From positions 212,773-276,772 of IMG/VR virus record IMGVR_UViG_3300027710_000011: 64,000 bases of DNA; one strand, written 5' to 3'. The notes beneath the pieces are model-generated. The model saw only the letters and a program-made list of their open reading frames with translations. It was not told the DNA's origin and did not search any database. Numbering within the stretch: the first letter of the stretch is position 1; the number at the start of each line of letters is the position of its first letter. The position numbers and the translations under genes were made by a program. Of the stretch, positions 2,356-41,448 are shown in pieces.

Positions 2356-2368
2356 AAGTCTGAAAAAG

Positions 2369-2396
2369 TAAAGAGGGGGTAAAACCTCTCTTTATG
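2369..2396 (+). terminator. Hairpin terminator ending in TTTATG
   Basis: TAAAGAGGGGGT-AAA-ACCTCTCTTTA, then TG, directly after the stop at 2355. Confidence 0.7.
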
Positions 2397-2631
2397 TTGT
2401 CACTTGTAAAACGCTGCTAAGGACCCTACAAAGGCCATAGATGAAATAAAAAAGAAAAGTCGAGGGTAGGTAGCTACCCAAATCTGAGTTCAATACAAGC
2501 CTTTTTAAAAGGTCACTATGCCAAAAAATACTGGCTAGCTTACTAATATAGTTAAAGCTATTTTAACTAAACCTAGTATAATAGGGGGGCCCCAGACCCC
2601 CGATAGTATACTAAGAATAATAAAGAGTATA

Positions 2632-2673
2632 ATGCGCGTGCGCGCACACATGCGCACGCATACGCGCACGCGT
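2632..2673. repeat. 42-bp perfect alternating purine-pyrimidine tract (Z-DNA-prone)
   Basis: ATGCGCGTGCGCGCACACATGCGCACGCATACGCGCACGCGT, flanked by TATAAT at 2628 and 2676. Confidence 0.85.
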
Positions 2674-2720
2674 TCTATAATGAGGGTTTCTTAAAAAGAG
2701 AAATTTTTTAAGAGTTAAGC

Positions 2721-2748
2721 GGCTGGGTAGTAGACCCAGCCTTTTATG
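2721..2748 (+). terminator. Hairpin ending in TTTTATG inside the non-coding element
   Basis: GGCTGGGT-AGTAG-ACCCAGCC-TTTTATG. Confidence 0.6.
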
Positions 2749-3082
2749 CTGAGAAGATGAGATCTTGAAGTTATAGGCTTAGAAAAGGTTTTAAGAGGTC
2801 TTAGAGCTATTTTCGTTGCTTAGATGAGCAACGATGAGTCTGAGAGAAAAGAAAGCCGTATAGACGGTTTAAACGAATCTAGCCAATTGACAGACCAACT
2901 ACCAGAAAAAGGACTTCGTCCAAAGTCTTGAGAGATTACCCTCCCCCAAAGCCCCCTCCCGCGAAACCGGGGCGGGGCGGCTTTTGACTTTACTTCCCTT
3001 TTCCTTTGTGGAGGTACTCACAACACCTCTTCGCCGTTCATGAGTGGCGGCAACCTGAAACAACGTTACTGAGGCGAACGAA

Positions 3083-7285: not shown

Positions 7286-8152
7286 TTACACGCGCAGAGC
7301 CGTGTTGCCCAGATTTGCCGTTTGAGCAGCGTAGCCGATGTTCTGCGCAGCAGTGTCGGAATCCACAGCTTGCACGAAGGCAGGACGCAGGTAAGGGTTC
7401 GCATTGGTGATGCTGATCGAGTCGAGCATCGATTGAGCGAACGCCATCACGCCCAGGCTGTGCTGGGTGATTGCCGTGAAGGTGATGTCGTACGTGACGG
7501 TTTCACCAGCGGCAGTCTTGTCGCGACGACCAGTCACATCACCAGCGCTCTTGGGGAACATGTTGGTCGACAACCAAGCATTGATCACCTTCGAGTGAGT
7601 GATGTCGGGCTCGATGAAGAGCACGGTCATGGCGTAGCGGTCAGCCAGCATGTCGGTAGGACGCTTGGCCGTGGTGGAGATGTTGGCCACCTTGGTTTCA
7701 GGATCCATGATCAGGTTGGTGATCCAGCCTTCCAAGAAGGCATTGATCGGACGACCATCCTTTTCAACCCAGCTGAACACTGGCTGCGAACGTGCACGCT
7801 TCACATCAGTGAAGTCTTCATGCATTTCGCCACCACCGCCGACAGGCGAGCTGTCCACGGTTTCGACTTCCAAAGTCGATTGCAGGCCAGTGATGCGGAT
7901 GGCGTGACGTTCCACCAGAGCGCGCAGAGTGCTCGTCCACTTTTCAGGGTTTTCCAGATCGCGGAAACCAGTGGGCGATTCAATGAGCAGCGCAATCATG
8001 TTGCGCTGGACGTACGCCTTATTGCTCACCCATTCAGCGTATTCAGGGGCGTAGCCGTTGTGCGCACCGAATTGCAGATCCAGCATCGGAGCTGTTCGGC
8101 CCTTTGCGTAAGCCTGGCCATTCGGCAACAGTGCGTTAGTAACTCGAGACAT
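7286..8152 (-). CDS. Tail tube protein (phiKZ gp30-like)
   Basis: About 288 aa, immediately downstream of the sheath; strong codon bias; C-terminal WLSTNMFPKSAG...YDITFTAI tube-like motif. Start set at ATG 8152, which has a GAGGA RBS. Confidence 0.85.
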   Translation of the reverse strand: MSRVTNALLPNGQAYAKGRTAPMLDLQFGAHNGYAPEYAEWVSNKAYVQRNMIALLIESPTGFRDLENPEKWTSTLRALVERHAIRITGLQSTLEVETVDSSPVGGGGEMHEDFTDVKRARSQPVFSWVEKDGRPINAFLEGWITNLIMDPETKVANISTTAKRPTDMLADRYAMTVLFIEPDITHSKVINAWLSTNMFPKSAGDVTGRRDKTAAGETVTYDITFTAITQHSLGVMAFAQSMLDSISITNANPYLRPAFVQAVDSDTAAQNIGYAAQTANLGNTALRV

Positions 8153-8221
8153 TGTGTTATCCTCGGATGAAAGAGATGAATGCATTACCCGGTAGTTTTT
8201 ACACTACCGGGCTTTGCTGCC

Positions 8222-10318
8222 TTAGCCTTGTTGAGCGTCGAGATCCGAGAGACGACGGCCGTTCACGTTCAACGTTGCCACGGTCTTCATGTTCGGACCG
8301 TACAGGTTGATTTCGGTGTGCCAGCTGTAACCATTGGCCTCGTCAGCCGCCGTGTAGTACGTACGCGGCACGACGGTGTAACGGTTGGTCAGGCGACCAC
8401 GGACGTTTTCGGAAATCCATTCATCGATGCGCTTGGCGAACTGTTCGTTCGACAGGTCAGCACGACCGGTGAACTGACGCCACGAAGCTTCGCCAACCTT
8501 CTGCAGTTCCACACAGGCCATGGCCGTGATGAAGCTGGTCAGGATCGAAGTGTCGTTGCTGTACACCGTCTTCAACGCAGGGAAGAACAGAGTTTCGCGG
8601 CCAGAGCTTTGCACCCAGTTCAAACCAGCATCCCAGTCCTTGTTGCGCACAGCGACCGAGGTGTAGCGAACGTTCACGTCAGTGAACATGTCCACTTCGT
8701 TCAGCGGAGCAACGTCGAACATGTTCTCGTTGTTCCACACGCCATTGCTGGCACCCCAAGCTGCAGCAGCACGGCGAGCCAACTGAGGAGTCAGAGGCAT
8801 GCGCTTGTTGTACTGCGAACCCAACATCTTGCCGTCGCGGCCGATGATGGCGGCACGCACCACTTGAGTGCCGTAGTATTCGGACTCAGGGTAGTTCTGA
8901 GCACGAGTGCGCAGAGCGATGGCGATCGAGTTCTCTTGCGATGCAGTAGCCGACGGCGAGTCGACATCGTGCACGGCCAGCACGCAGAACGTGTCCTTGC
9001 GCTGAGCAATGATCTTCAGCAGGTCGTACTTGGTTGCCAGCGGGAAGCCCGAGTCATAGACGATCGAAACGGGGTAACGCGCAGCGTCCAGCATGTCGCT
9101 GTTGGGATCTGCAAACTTCTGCATCCAAGCGCTCACCGAACGAGCAAAGGCCGCATTGTTCATGGTGCCGTCGGCGCCGCCGCGAGCGTAGGTTGTCGAT
9201 GCTTCGCTCAGGAGCGTCGCATTGCCACCGCTGGTTTGCAGTTGGAACGTCACGTAAGGAGCGCCAGTCGAGTCCTTGCCGGAAACCAGATTGAAGCGAT
9301 ACTGTTCATCAGCATCACCCTTCAGGTCGCACGAAGTCAGGGCCGAAGGCAGTTCAGCAGCAGTCACCAGATCCAAGATGGTCTTGACGTTGGCGTCGTA
9401 GGTGTGCATTTCACCGAACGGACCGTACTGCTTGGGCATGCCCTTGCTTTCCAGATCTTGGTAGTCCTGGATGAAACGGTCGCCGACATACATCAGCTTG
9501 CTGGTGTTGCGATCCAAGGAACCAGGCTTGAAGCTCAGATCCAAGTACTGCTCGCCGGCTTGGGTTTGCACCACGACGGGAGTGCTCAAGACATCGGCGC
9601 GTGTCACGCAAGCGATGCGGAACGGGTACAGCTTGGCTTGATCGATCAAGCGGCTGTCCAGAGGTGCATTGCCGTTGACAGTCGGAGCCCAGAGACGCAG
9701 GCCGACGTTGTTGCCGTCTGCACCTTCGCTCGGAACACGCAGATCCATGATCGGATAGCGAACCGACTGAGTCGAAGTCGTGGTGTCCACTTGGTCACCA
9801 ACGCCTTGAGAAGCAGTACCGAAAGTATCGGCTCCGTCGACGTCAGGAGTCACCTTGTCGGCAACCCACTTGACCTTGTAGCCTTGGACAGTTTTCGTAC
9901 CGTCCTTGACAGGCAAGCCGTCGACGTCCAGTTGGTACGAATTGTCAGGATTGCGCTTGTACACCGGCACTGCCGTTGCCAAGACATCCATGGACAGGCG
10001 GATTGTCGCTGCAGGACCTGCATCGTCAGGAACGATACGGACACACAGCTGGCTATTGCCTTGACTGTTGATGACGTTGTTCATCAACGAAGCATGGTTG
10101 AAGTACGACGACGTGGGGTCGAACGTAGCGTCACCATACAACGCGTTACGGCTGTTGCCTACGCAAAGCTGAGGATCGCGAGGACCCTTCTTGGCGTAGA
10201 AGAAAGACAACGGCAGGTGGGTGGGACGATCTTCAGGCACAGCGACGGGAGTGCGAAAGCTCTCGTCCTTGATGCCATTGTTGATCACTTTCGGTGCGGC
10301 GTTAACGATAGCGGACAT
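8222..10318 (-). CDS. Tail sheath protein (phiKZ gp29-like)
   Basis: 698 aa; N-terminal NAAPKVINNGIKDES and PTHLP; YDSGFPLATK and C-terminal GYSWHTEINLYG; strongly biased codon usage. Confidence 0.9.
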   Translation of the reverse strand: MSAIVNAAPKVINNGIKDESFRTPVAVPEDRPTHLPLSFFYAKKGPRDPQLCVGNSRNALYGDATFDPTSSYFNHASLMNNVINSQGNSQLCVRIVPDDAGPAATIRLSMDVLATAVPVYKRNPDNSYQLDVDGLPVKDGTKTVQGYKVKWVADKVTPDVDGADTFGTASQGVGDQVDTTTSTQSVRYPIMDLRVPSEGADGNNVGLRLWAPTVNGNAPLDSRLIDQAKLYPFRIACVTRADVLSTPVVVQTQAGEQYLDLSFKPGSLDRNTSKLMYVGDRFIQDYQDLESKGMPKQYGPFGEMHTYDANVKTILDLVTAAELPSALTSCDLKGDADEQYRFNLVSGKDSTGAPYVTFQLQTSGGNATLLSEASTTYARGGADGTMNNAAFARSVSAWMQKFADPNSDMLDAARYPVSIVYDSGFPLATKYDLLKIIAQRKDTFCVLAVHDVDSPSATASQENSIAIALRTRAQNYPESEYYGTQVVRAAIIGRDGKMLGSQYNKRMPLTPQLARRAAAAWGASNGVWNNENMFDVAPLNEVDMFTDVNVRYTSVAVRNKDWDAGLNWVQSSGRETLFFPALKTVYSNDTSILTSFITAMACVELQKVGEASWRQFTGRADLSNEQFAKRIDEWISENVRGRLTNRYTVVPRTYYTAADEANGYSWHTEINLYGPNMKTVATLNVNGRRLSDLDAQQG

Positions 10319-10494
10319 GTTGATTCCGTAAAAGAAAGGGTTTTGGATATACGTAAAGCAACAGATGGCACTTGCAAGCGGTTAACCGGTTGCCACGAAT
10401 CACAGTACGTACTTCAAGCTTTCTAAGTTCTCAAACTGCTTTGCGGGCAATAAGGAACTTTGTATTAGGCCTATTTAATTCATGCGTCTTTTTT

Positions 10495-10653
10495 GGAAGC
10501 CACTAGAACAAATAAGCGTTTAGGCGCGACAGCAATAGCTTGCCACACACAATCAGCTGATCAAACGCGATGGCCGCAGGTGATTGTTATGTGACAAGCT
10601 CTTGGAAAGTGGCTTAAGCCAGTGTCTTTGCAGACGCACTTATTGATGCTTCC
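10495..10653. ncRNA. Candidate structured RNA or long structured leader in the divergent intergenic region
   Basis: Nested inverted repeats GGAAGC/GCTTCC, AATAAG/CTTATT, CGTTT/AGACG and AGGCGC/GTGTCT enclose hairpin 10537-10600 and palindrome 10610-10621. Confidence 0.4.
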
Positions 10654-10798
10654 TTGAGTTTTAAGTACTCTTCAATGAGTGCATTCAGATAAGAGCTCTA
10701 TTTAAACTCTAGTCGAACCCCGTGAAAAAGGGCCCGTGTTCATATTAAATGCACAACGGCGCTCCATGGTAGCGGATGTCTTTTTTAAGGAACCCAAA

Positions 10799-11683
10799 AT
10801 GTCTGTGTTTCAAACCGCTTACCAGACCAGTGCTTGTGCTGGTACTGTCACAAGCAAACTCGTGGAAGCACTGATTCGTGCTCGTATTGAAAACTATATT
10901 CGAACCGAGCAAGGCTTCACCGATTTGTACCTGGTGCGCCGTGATCGCTACGTGGATGAGCTGGTGCCTTCGTTCCATCACCCGGTCGTCAGCGAAGCTT
11001 CTGGCGAGAAGTTTGTCTATGTGGACGTTCGTCCTTACGGCAAGCAAAGCGCCAGCACGCTTGATTTCGAAATCACGAATAAAGACGCTTACGACGCAGC
11101 GACTCTTCGTGGTCGTCTTCAGCAGATGTGGACAACTGGCGGTCAAGCAGCTCTGCGCGACATGCGTTTGCCAGCAATGGCATTCCCTGCCTGGATCTCC
11201 ATCAATCTCACCAAGCGTCTGAACTTCGGTCCTGCCGAGCAAGCCAAGATCTGCATCTTGGCAGGTATCTACTACCTCAGCTTGTTCAGCGATGAACCCG
11301 TTGACAAAGTGATCGTTGTCACTCAAGTGGCAAAGAACACCGGCATCAAGCCACAAGTGGTCGAGGAGGTCGTGGACCGCTATCCTTATATCGCGAACAT
11401 CAACGAGTTCTGCGAAGCAGCTAAGGAAGAAATTCAAAACGTTCGTCTGAACAATTTGAATACCGCCACGCTGTTCCCAATCATGGCCGGTACTTGGTAT
11501 GGTGCCAACTCCGCCGAGATCACTGCGGTTGCTTTGGAGCATCCGCCGACTTGGATCATGATGGTTTACCAAGCAGTCACTGCTCGGTCTTACTACCATT
11601 CGGCCCTGGCCAAAATGCTGGAGCAAAACCAGTACAAGCGCGAAGTTCGTCAATTCACCATCTCCTTGCGAGAAGGCGAGTAA
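10799..11683 (+). CDS. Virion structural protein (phiKZ gp28-like)
   Basis: Divergent from the sheath as in phiKZ-like phages; ALEHPPTW motif; start set at ATG 10799, which has an AAGGA RBS. Confidence 0.7.
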   Translation: MSVFQTAYQTSACAGTVTSKLVEALIRARIENYIRTEQGFTDLYLVRRDRYVDELVPSFHHPVVSEASGEKFVYVDVRPYGKQSASTLDFEITNKDAYDAATLRGRLQQMWTTGGQAALRDMRLPAMAFPAWISINLTKRLNFGPAEQAKICILAGIYYLSLFSDEPVDKVIVVTQVAKNTGIKPQVVEEVVDRYPYIANINEFCEAAKEEIQNVRLNNLNTATLFPIMAGTWYGANSAEITAVALEHPPTWIMMVYQAVTARSYYHSALAKMLEQNQYKREVRQFTISLREGE

Positions 11684-19812: not shown

Positions 19813-19837
19813 GTGATATGTGGTTATAACTATTTTC
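19813..19837 (-). promoter_or_regulatory. Putative phage early/middle promoter motif, copy 1
   Basis: Minus strand GAAAATAGTTATAACCACATATCAC; 19/25 identical without gaps to 41424-41448. Confidence 0.6.
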
Positions 19838-41423: not shown

Positions 41424-41448
41424 GTGATATGTAGCTGAAAGTAATTTC
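41424..41448 (-). promoter_or_regulatory. Putative phage early/middle promoter motif, copy 2
   Basis: Minus strand GAAATTACTTTCAGCTACATATCAC. Confidence 0.6.

What the first reader, a model, noticed from the sequence alone, without database searches (positions are those of the whole stretch)
10495..10653. Nested multi-stem RNA structure between the divergent sheath/tube and baseplate operons
Seen, from outside in: GGAAGC 10495/GCTTCC 10648; AATAAG 10511/CTTATT 10639; CGTTT 10517/AGACG 10632; AGGCGC 10522/GTGTCT 10622 (three G-U pairs if the plus strand is transcribed). These enclose a long hairpin AGCTTG-CACA-ACAATCA-CTG / CAG-TGATTGT-TGTG-CAAGCT (10537-10600) and the palindrome TGGCTTAAGCCA (10610-10621), giving a three-way junction. 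More stems flank it: TGGCA/TGCCA 10366-10395 and GTGCATT/AATGCAC 10679-10754. The 480-bp gap has no convincing ORF. Inference: an unannotated ncRNA or a long structured 5' leader that balances expression of tail components.
Basis: partly seen in the sequence, partly recalled or inferred. Interest (0 to 1): 0.6.

Follow-up and report, generated by a model that had tools for sequence, protein, structure and literature searches.

The report
Conserved structured leader before phage sheath gene
The 480-base gap between the tail-sheath gene and a head-vertex gene of an uncultivated phiKZ-like giant phage is a strongly conserved non-coding region built from about ten local hairpins, most likely the long 5' leaders of two late operons that diverge from crossed promoters, and not the single nested three-way-junction RNA first proposed.

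Summary
Only the long hairpin (10533-10604) and the small palindrome (10610-10621) survive comparison with relatives. The four long-range closing stems show no compensatory change and break in relatives, so the three-way junction is not supported.

The whole 480-nt gap (10319-10798) is under purifying selection. It is 80-82% identical to three relatives, where third codon positions of the flanking genes are only 53-60% identical. It holds no conserved ORF, no Rfam family and no tRNA.

It consists of about ten local hairpins. These have 12 and 9 pairs with changes on both sides, against about 4 and 3 in shuffles.

The left two thirds fold significantly only on the minus (sheath-sense) strand. 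This holds in five of five sequences.

Exactly one TATG per strand is conserved in all relatives. TATG is the start-site motif of phiKZ late promoters. The plus-strand copy gives a start at G10591 and the minus-strand copy a start at G10741.

My best model is a 423-nt sheath leader and a 208-nt leader for the gp28-like operon, overlapping antisense by 151 nt. No transcript data could be obtained, so starts and function are inferred. I class it as a new member of a known kind.

The parts
10319..10798 (.). Whole conserved non-coding gap between the sheath gene (8222-10318, minus strand) and the gp28-like vertex-protein gene (10799-11683, plus strand)
   Evidence: Pfam hits of the flanking genes. 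The gap is 426-498 bp in all clade relatives. It is 80-82% identical to three relatives, against 53-60% at third codon positions of the flanking genes. There is no conserved ORF, no Rfam family and no tRNA.
10741..10744 (-). Invariant TATG on the minus strand (CATA on plus). Predicted late-promoter start site for the sheath-tube operon, with G at 10741
   Evidence: It is the only minus-strand TATG conserved in all six distinct sequences and sits in the block GTTCATAATAAAT, which is invariant in the relatives (the window reads GTTCATATTAAAT). TATG as the phiKZ nvRNAP start-site motif comes from PMC7598289, PMC4666361 and PMC12809450. The start itself is inferred.
10588..10591 (+). Invariant TATG on the plus strand, inside the right arm of the long hairpin. 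Predicted late-promoter start site for the gp28-like operon, with G at 10591
   Evidence: It is the only plus-strand TATG conserved in all sequences. It lies in the block TGATTGTTATGTGAC, which is invariant in the five full-length sequences; partial L058 differs there at two bases outside the TATG. The start itself is inferred.
10319..10741 (-). Predicted 423-nt 5' leader of the sheath-tube mRNA
   Evidence: Folding z is -2.83 on the minus strand and -0.45 for the same DNA on the plus strand. In five relatives z is -1.9 to -5.2 on minus and -0.5 to -1.4 on plus.
10591..10798 (+). Predicted 208-nt 5' leader of the gp28-like operon. It overlaps the sheath leader antisense over 10591-10741
   Evidence: It follows from the TATG position. 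Hairpins He and Hf have lower energy on the plus strand in 5 of 6 and 6 of 6 sequences. The overall z is not significant (-1.5).
10533..10604 (-).
   Evidence: 22 plus 6 pairs, 4 of them with changes on both sides. Energy is lower on the minus strand in 5 of 5 sequences because of two conserved U-G pairs. The right arm is almost invariant and the left arm varies.
10469..10517 (-). Hb hairpin (arms 10469-10482 and 10505-10517, inner stem 10486-10490/10497-10501)
   Evidence: 13 pairs, 5 with changes on both sides, 96.8% of cells paired. The window folds at -13.5 kcal/mol on minus and -5.6 on plus.
10349..10412 (-).
   Evidence: 12 pairs, 3 with changes on both sides. Many G-U pairs occur on the minus strand. 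Consensus energy is -13.5 on minus and -7.2 on plus.
10610..10621 (.). Hd, the small palindrome hairpin
   Evidence: T-A changes to C-G at the outer pair and, by eye, at the inner pair in L004. L058 keeps the stem with another loop. L002 has deleted it.
10622..10637 (+). He hairpin GTGTCT/AGACGC, followed by ACTTATTGA
   Evidence: One T-A to C-G change in L058. Energy is lower on the plus strand in 5 of 6 sequences. The terminator scan flagged it as terminator-like, but it is weak and lacks this phage's TTTATGC terminator tail.
10636..10682 (+). Hf hairpin (11-bp stem 10636-10646/10672-10682 with inner stem 10656-10659/10667-10670)
   Evidence: 3 pairs with changes on both sides in two lineages (L004, L058) and 97% of cells paired. 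Energy is lower on the plus strand in 6 of 6 sequences.
10692..10736 (-). Hg1 (10714-10736) and Hg2 (10692-10710), two hairpins directly downstream of the predicted minus-strand start
   Evidence: Energy is lower on the minus strand in 5 of 6 sequences. Hg1 has partial compensation. L058 has a different hairpin at the same place.
10734..10776 (+). Hi (10734-10759) and Hj (10763-10776), hairpins upstream of the gp28-like ribosome-binding site
   Evidence: 2 and 1 pairs with changes on both sides. The support is weaker than for the others.

Best explanation
The gap is a conserved, non-coding, RNA-structured control region of a nucleus-forming, phiKZ-like jumbo phage. Two late promoters of the TATG type are crossed. 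The leftward one (start at G10741 on the minus strand) lies to the right of the rightward one (start at G10591 on the plus strand). The sheath-tube operon therefore carries a 423-nt leader and the gp28-like head operon a 208-nt leader, and the two leaders are antisense to each other over 151 nt.

The sheath leader folds into a chain of local hairpins (Hg1, Hg2, Hc, Hb, Ha). Its right arm encodes the start site of the opposite operon on the other strand, which would explain why that arm is nearly invariant while the left arm changes to keep pairing.

The likely role of the leaders is post-transcriptional. Candidates are protecting or processing the very abundant late mRNAs (Hc is long enough to be an RNase III-type substrate) and setting the translation rate of the sheath gene, whose Shine-Dalgarno sequence is weak.

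Shown: conservation, the hairpins, the strand bias, the invariant TATGs and the presence of phage RNA polymerase genes. Inferred: that the TATGs are the start sites, that the RNAs exist, and what they do.
For: Identity of the phage:
- The flanking genes match the phiKZ sheath, tube and gp28 families.
- The genome encodes homologues of chimallin, nvRNAP gp55/68/71/73/74, vRNAP gp80 and PhuZ.

Selection on the gap:
- The gap length is kept at 426-498 bp in nine relatives.
- Gap identity is 80-82% against 53-60% at third codon positions. For L004 it is 65% against 42-57%.
- Indels that are not multiples of three and the lack of any shared ORF exclude coding.

Structure:
- The local-hairpin model has 12 pairs with changes on both sides on the minus-strand left part, against 4.2 in shuffles (0/500) and 1-4 in slid controls.
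- It has 9 such pairs on the right part, against 2.8 in shuffles (0/500) and 1-5 in slid controls.

Strand:
- Consensus energy of the left part is -53.6 kcal/mol on minus and -36.6 on plus.
- The z-score of the predicted leader is -2.83 on minus and -0.45 on plus. The same direction is seen in 5 of 5 sequences.

Promoters:
- One TATG per strand is invariant. In five of six distinct sequences the plus-strand one is the only TATG on that strand in the gap, and in four of six the minus-strand one is.
- The same crossed order of TATGs is visible in the shorter gaps of phiKZ, FLC9 and four metagenomic relatives.
- TATG is necessary for phiKZ nvRNAP initiation, and sequence downstream of the start matters (PMC4666361, PMC12809450).

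Precedent:
- 5'UTR-resident structured RNAs have been reported in phiKZ and 201phi2-1 (PMC10914365, PMC11512511).
Against: - No transcript data are available.
- Only five or six distinct sequences were available, and three of them are close to each other. The structures tested were derived from the same alignments, which inflates the comparison with slid controls.
- The plus-strand leader has no significant folding z-score, and the right part shows no overall strand preference.
- TATG specificity is known for phiKZ. Here it is extrapolated to a phage whose nvRNAP subunits are 20-37% identical, and the TATG-binding subunit gp123 was not checked.
- The sheath promoter could lie outside the gap.
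- The RNAalifold covariation terms were slightly positive.
Confidence: 0.5

Rival explanations
1. The gap encodes one or more free-standing or 5'UTR-derived small non-coding RNAs. Examples would be a minus-strand RNA covering Hc-Hb-Ha, or a short plus-strand RNA from G10591 ended at hairpin He. These would be released by premature termination or processing, as proposed for 17 phiKZ and 8 201phi2-1 5'UTR-derived RNAs, and would act in trans.
For: The structural and conservation evidence is the same as for the leader model. He is a hairpin followed by ACTTATTGA, a weak echo of the chimallivirus terminator form of hairpin plus TTAT (PMC10914365). A poorly conserved, indel-rich linker (10405-10467) separates Ha from Hb, as might be expected between modules.
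Against: The gap contains no copy of this phage's own terminator form, a GC-rich hairpin followed by TTTATGC, which occurs about 35 times elsewhere. No T-tract follows Hc, Hb or Ha on the minus strand. Conservation runs without a break into the sheath ribosome-binding region. No target complementarity was found, and the element is single copy.
Confidence: 0.2
2. The conservation is at the DNA level. The gap would be a promoter and regulator region whose inverted repeats are protein-binding sites or extruded DNA hairpins used in initiation, as in phage N4 early promoters (own knowledge), with no function for the RNA structure.
For: The two invariant blocks surround the TATGs. In phiKZ, undefined sequence up to about +50 downstream of the start is needed for late-promoter activity (PMC4666361). 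The right arm of Hc is sequence-invariant rather than covarying.
Against: Compensatory double changes keep pairing while the sequence changes. Hb has 5 such pairs, Hf 3 and Hd 1-2. That is not how sequence-specific protein sites evolve. Hairpin loops vary in length and sequence. Pairing depends on G-U pairs that exist on one strand only, and the folding z-score is strand-specific. This points to a single-stranded, RNA-like molecule. 480 bp is far more than the 104-128 bp that RSL2 and phiKZ need for the same pair of promoters.
Confidence: 0.15
3. One reading: a single plus-strand RNA in which four nested long-range stems (10495-10527 with 10622-10653) close a three-way junction formed by the long hairpin and the palindrome.
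For: The stems exist in the window. The minimum-free-energy fold of the excerpt reproduces the two outermost stems and the long hairpin, with z = -2.5.
Against: The closing stems have no compensatory change and several breaks in relatives. L004 loses stem 1 altogether. Their halves pair locally, with covariation, in Hb and Hf. The same DNA read on the plus strand over the larger region has z = -0.45. If the plus transcript starts at G10591, the 5' halves of all four stems are not transcribed.
Confidence: 0.04
4. Chance or neutral spacer: an ordinary intergenic region whose hairpins are accidental.
For: The z-scores for single sequences are moderate (-2.5 to -2.9). The coordinates were chosen after the fact.
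Against: The gap is as conserved as, or more conserved than, the neighbouring essential genes, and far above synonymous sites. The gap length is retained in every clade member. Double changes exceed all 500 shuffles.
Confidence: 0.02

Closest known systems
5'UTR-resident structured RNAs of phiKZ and 201phi2-1, including the conserved structure upstream of tail gene phiKZ gp182 / 201phi2-1 gp277 (PMC10914365, PMC11512511)
   Same: It is a structured non-coding RNA element in the 5' region of a late virion gene of a chimallivirus-type jumbo phage, and it is conserved among related phages in position and fold.
   Different: Those RNAs are short (about 70-250 nt) and are bounded by a mapped start and a premature intrinsic terminator. 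Here the conserved region is about 420-480 nt with about ten hairpins, has no canonical terminator, sits before the sheath gene and has no transcript data. No sequence or Rfam relationship was found.
phiKZ late promoters (5'-TATG-3' with the start at G, recognised by the nvRNAP beta-like subunit; PMC4666361, PMC12809450)
   Same: One invariant TATG lies on each strand upstream of late structural genes. The sequence downstream of each is conserved. The genome encodes nvRNAP homologues.
   Different: Initiation at these sites was not measured. Here one TATG lies inside the arm of a conserved RNA hairpin of the opposite transcript. The predicted leaders (208 and 423 nt) are much longer than phiKZ's whole 128-bp gap at the same gene pair allows.
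RNase III-processed leader hairpins of phage mRNAs, such as T7 early and late processing sites and the lambda N leader (own knowledge, not tested)
   Same: Hc is a stem of about 22 bp plus a 6-bp apical extension inside a long phage mRNA leader. That length fits a double-strand-specific endonuclease.
   Different: There is no evidence of cleavage. The host and its RNases are unknown. In a nucleus-forming phage the compartment in which processing would occur is unclear.
Overlapping divergent (face-to-face 5' end) transcription units with antisense 5' UTRs in bacteria, sometimes called the excludon-like arrangement (own knowledge)
   Same: The predicted 151-nt antisense overlap of the 5' leaders of two divergent operons could couple their expression.
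   Different: Both operons here are late structural operons that are expected to be co-expressed rather than mutually exclusive. The overlap is predicted, not observed.

Membership tests
phiKZ-type late (nvRNAP) promoter | A 5'-TATG-3' motif on the non-template strand at the start site | tested here: met
   One TATG per strand is invariant in all six distinct sequences, at 10588-10591 on plus and 10744-10741 on minus.
phiKZ-type late (nvRNAP) promoter | The phage encodes the non-virion multisubunit RNA polymerase | tested here: met
   tblastn finds homologues of phiKZ gp55, gp68, gp71, gp73 and gp74 (E 1e-19 to 1e-105) in the 276.8-kb genome. gp123 was not checked.
phiKZ-type late (nvRNAP) promoter | Transcripts start at the G of TATG late in infection | not testable with these tools
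5'UTR-derived ncRNA made by premature termination (phiKZ, 201phi2-1) | An intrinsic terminator (GC-rich hairpin followed by the TTAT-type tail) inside the 5'UTR, less than about 250 nt from the start | tested here: inconclusive
   The gap has no copy of this phage's hairpin plus TTTATGC terminator form. Only the weak 6-bp hairpin He, followed by ACTTATTGA, resembles it.
5'UTR-derived ncRNA made by premature termination (phiKZ, 201phi2-1) | An abundant short RNA species sharing the mRNA 5' end | not testable with these tools
   This needs northern blots or long-read RNA-seq.
Any curated RNA family (Rfam 15) | A covariance-model match at the gathering score | tested here: not met
   There are no matches in the window at gathering thresholds. 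In the gap the only hits have E > 4 and bits far below threshold.
Early (virion RNAP) promoter of this phage | The motif ACATATCAC preceded by a T-rich stretch, 30-140 nt upstream of early genes | tested here: not met
   About 20 intergenic copies exist, all on the minus strand, including copies upstream of the gp68 and gp71 homologues. The gap has only GTCACATAACAATCAC, which carries a 4-nt insertion and lacks the T-rich upstream stretch.
   There are 0 double changes in the three closing helices, and pairs are broken in relatives.
RNase III-type processing hairpin | A continuous double-stranded stem of about 20 bp or more in the transcript | tested here: met
   On the minus strand Hc forms 22 pairs with one bulge, plus a 6-bp apical stem, in all five sequences.
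RNase III-type processing hairpin | Site-specific cleavage in vivo or in vitro | not testable with these tools
   This needs an enzymatic assay.

The most novel reading that the evidence does not exclude
The two late operons would be wired through their leaders. The start site of the head-protein operon is embedded in the arm of a hairpin of the tail-sheath leader, and the two leaders are antisense over 151 nt. Transcription of one unit, or duplex formation between the two RNAs, would then set the sheath/tube to head-vertex protein ratio. Alternatively, the hairpin chain could be a recognition signal for handling late mRNAs of a nucleus-forming phage, for example export from the phage nucleus or recruitment to ribosomes. 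Either reading would be a previously undescribed layer of late gene control in chimalliviruses.
Probability: 0.12. Interest if true: 0.75.

Novelty: new member of a known kind. Interest (0 to 1): 0.5.

Why it matters
Jumbo phages pack their genomes tightly. The median inter-ORF gap here is about 41 bp by a crude ORF call, so a 480-bp non-coding stretch that evolves more slowly than the essential genes beside it must do something important. How phiKZ-like phages choose late promoters with only a four-base motif is still open, and so is how they control and route late mRNAs out of the phage nucleus. This element offers a compact, conserved, sequence-defined test object: two invariant TATGs with conserved flanks, one of them inside a conserved RNA hairpin. 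It can be tested with in vitro transcription, reporters and structure probing, even though the phage itself is uncultivated.

Tried and rejected
- Rfam at gathering and at E-value thresholds found nothing.
- ARAGORN found no tRNA or tmRNA.
- The sigma-70 promoter scan found none, as expected for a phage with its own polymerases.
- blastn against the phage collection found no DNA relative. By protein, the best known phages are at most 35% identical.
- IMG/VR by protein pattern found nothing. IMG/VR by the invariant 15-mer gave 42 hits, all chance.
- The JGI metagenome scan returned only the record itself and distant relatives.
- A search with the sheath N-terminal fragment returned one distant relative.
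- DNA of three useful relatives (the contigs of P0003, P0007 and P0009) could not be fetched because the sample files are too large.
- Supplementary start-site tables of the phiKZ ONT-cappable-seq paper are not held. The 2014 phiKZ transcriptome paper is not held.
- Small-ORF hypothesis: rejected. The recurring 33-codon TTG frame and the 'MALA...' frame are broken by frameshifting indels and have no Shine-Dalgarno sequence.
- Repeated-element hypothesis: rejected. The element is single copy in the genome.
- The direct repeats inside the gap (GTCTTTTTT, TAAGGAAC, CTATTTAA) are not conserved in relatives, so I took them for chance.
- Terminator and early-promoter readings of the long hairpin: rejected.

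Full report
**Context.** The window is the last 64 kb of a 276,772-bp viral metagenome record. The genes around the finding are:
- a phiKZ-type tail sheath (8222-10318, minus strand, PF20961) and tail tube (7286-8185, minus strand);
- divergently, a homologue of the phiKZ gp28 vertex-binding protein (10799-11683, plus strand, PF25614), followed by DUF7193 and a further large gene.

The same gene order occurs in phiKZ (gp30-gp29 | gp28-gp27-gp26), FLC9 and RSL2. The genome also encodes homologues of chimallin, five nvRNAP subunits, a vRNAP subunit and PhuZ. It is therefore a nucleus-forming, phiKZ-like jumbo phage that transcribes its own genes. The rightward operon is head-associated by annotation, not a baseplate operon.

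**Observation.**
- The gap is 480 bp. The gp28-like start is the ATG at 10799, which is conserved in relatives. The upstream ATG at 10766, used by an automatic gene call, is not conserved.
- The excerpt 10495-10653 folds better than shuffles on both strands (z -2.5 and -2.9).
- Rfam, tRNA and sigma-70 promoter scans are empty.

**Relatives.** No DNA relative exists in the phage collection, and known phages are at most 35% identical in the gp28-like protein. The large protein collection holds nine relatives at 52-74% identity. All of those whose contigs reach both flanking genes keep the divergent arrangement and a gap of 426-498 bp. DNA was readable for L002, L003 (identical to L059 in the gap), L006, L004 (identical to L005) and, for the right half only, L058. 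In more distant phages the same gap is much shorter: 128 bp in phiKZ, 104 bp in RSL2, 296 bp in FLC9 and 208-231 bp in four metagenomic relatives. The long gap is therefore specific to this clade.

**Selection.**
- Gap identity to L002, L003 and L006 is 80-82%. The flanking genes are 70-83% identical overall and only 53-62% at third codon positions.
- For L004 the gap is 65% identical, against 42-57% at third positions.
- Long blocks are invariant or nearly so, for example TGATTGTTATGTGAC, GTGTCTTTnCAGACGCACT and CAGATGGCACTTGCAA.
- One- and two-base indels are frequent and no ORF is shared, so the region is not coding.
- The element is single copy in the genome.

On five distinct sequences, only one pair has a change on both sides, and it lies in the long hairpin. 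The three closing helices have none, and several of their pairs are broken. No measure exceeds the shuffles.

**Local hairpins are supported instead.** RNAalifold and per-sequence folds show a chain of local hairpins. Their coordinates, are:
- Ha 10358-10403
- Hb 10469-10517
- He 10622-10637
- Hf 10636-10682
- Hg2 10692-10710
- Hg1 10714-10736
- Hi 10734-10759
- Hj 10763-10776

Counted with the tool:
- The minus-strand left part has 12 pairs with changes on both sides, against 4.2 in shuffles (0/500) and 1-4 when partners are slid.
- The right part has 9, against 2.8 in shuffles (0/500) and 1-5 when slid.

Two caveats apply. There are only five or six sequences, and the structures were derived from the same alignments.

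**Strand.**
- Ha, Hb, Hc and Hg are more stable on the minus strand in nearly all sequences. He and Hf are more stable on the plus strand.
- Consensus energy of the left part is -53.6 kcal/mol on minus and -36.6 on plus. For the right part it is -28.0 on plus and -24.4 on minus.
- Against dinucleotide shuffles, the region from 10741 to just inside the sheath gene has z = -2.83 on the minus strand and -0.45 on the plus strand.
- In my own script, the five sequences give -3.2, -1.9, -2.5, -2.7 and -5.2 on minus, against -0.5, -1.2, -1.0, -1.4 and -1.3 on plus.
- The right 226 nt show no clear preference.

**Promoters.**
- The genome has two strong intergenic motifs. One is ACATATCAC with a T-rich upstream stretch, all copies on the minus strand. 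Copies lie upstream of the gp68 and gp71 homologues, so it is very likely the early vRNAP promoter.
- The other is a GC-rich hairpin followed by TTTATGC, equivalent to the phiKZ terminator form (PMC10914365). Neither motif occurs in the gap.
- phiKZ late promoters are defined only by TATG with the start at G, plus undefined downstream sequence (PMC7598289, PMC4666361, PMC12809450).
- In the gap, exactly one TATG per strand is conserved in all sequences: plus at 10588-10591 and minus at 10744-10741. In most sequences they are the only ones on their strand.
- They are crossed: the leftward one lies to the right of the rightward one. The same order is visible in phiKZ, FLC9, L053-L055 and L062.
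- If these are the start sites, the sheath leader is 423 nt and the gp28-like leader is 208 nt, overlapping antisense by 151 nt.
- This fits the strand data. Everything left of 10591 would be transcribed only leftward, and it folds better on the minus strand.
- It also explains why the right arm of Hc, which carries the plus-strand TATG and its downstream flank, is invariant while the left arm changes.

**Mechanism (inferred).** The hairpin chain most likely acts on the mRNA. Candidate roles are stabilisation from the 5'-proximal hairpin Hg1, processing at the 22-bp stem Hc, and control of sheath translation, whose Shine-Dalgarno sequence (GGAA) is weak compared with the AGGAGG-type sites common in this genome. 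The antisense overlap could couple the two operons. None of this was tested.

**Comparison with known elements.** The nearest known things are the 5'UTR-resident structured RNAs reported for phiKZ and 201phi2-1, one of which is conserved upstream of a tail gene (PMC10914365, PMC11512511). This element shares the setting but differs in four ways: it is much longer, it has no internal canonical terminator, it precedes the sheath gene, and it has no family in Rfam. I class it as a new member of a known kind.

**Limits.**
- Three relatives could not be read.

Noticed in passing
whole genome (G000); in the window for example 41424-41432 and 19813-19821, minus strand: The motif ACATATCAC, preceded by a T-rich stretch, occurs about 20 times in intergenic DNA, always on the minus strand and usually 30-140 nt upstream of a start codon. 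Copies lie upstream of the homologues of nvRNAP gp68 and gp71, and one lies about 360 nt upstream of the chimallin homologue. It is probably this phage's early (virion RNAP) promoter.
   Followed up: partly
whole genome; in the window for example 2743, 16135/16167 and 56034: About 35 GC-rich hairpins are followed by TTTATGC(Y)GT, and several are bidirectional (CATAAAG...hairpin...CTTTATGC). This is the same form as the phiKZ terminator motif reported in PMC10914365. The tail contains TATG, so these sites might double as late start sites for the next gene.
   Followed up: partly
window 2356-3082: A 727-bp stretch with no convincing ORF. It contains an alternating purine-pyrimidine GC-rich run (GCGCGTGCGCGCACACATGCGCACGCATACGCGCACGCG), several terminator-like hairpins and AT-rich blocks. 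It has no Rfam or tRNA hit. It is one of the largest non-coding stretches of the genome and is unexplained.
   Followed up: no
window 10766-10798: An automatic gene call (P0001, 305 aa) starts the gp28-like gene at ATG 10766. Relatives lack that ATG and conserve the ATG at 10799 with an AAGGA ribosome-binding site, so the true protein is probably 294 aa.
   Followed up: yes
L062 3001-5091: In a more distant metagenomic relative, the sheath gene is called as two ORFs (248 and 434 aa) separated by 39 nt. This could be a frameshift, a sequencing error or an interruption.
   Followed up: no
L052 1869-3000: In a 270-kb metagenomic relative (35% identity in the gp28-like protein), the sheath/gp28 gap is 1132 bp. 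It appears to hold an inserted ORF on the plus strand followed by a terminator-like hairpin.
   Followed up: no
L007, L053-L055 and L062, gap next to the sheath start: FLC9-like phages share the block AATGGTATGGTTTC about 25-35 nt from the sheath start codon on the gp28-sense strand, and the block TTAACATAGGATG nearer to gp28. These are conserved candidate crossed late promoters in another clade.
   Followed up: partly
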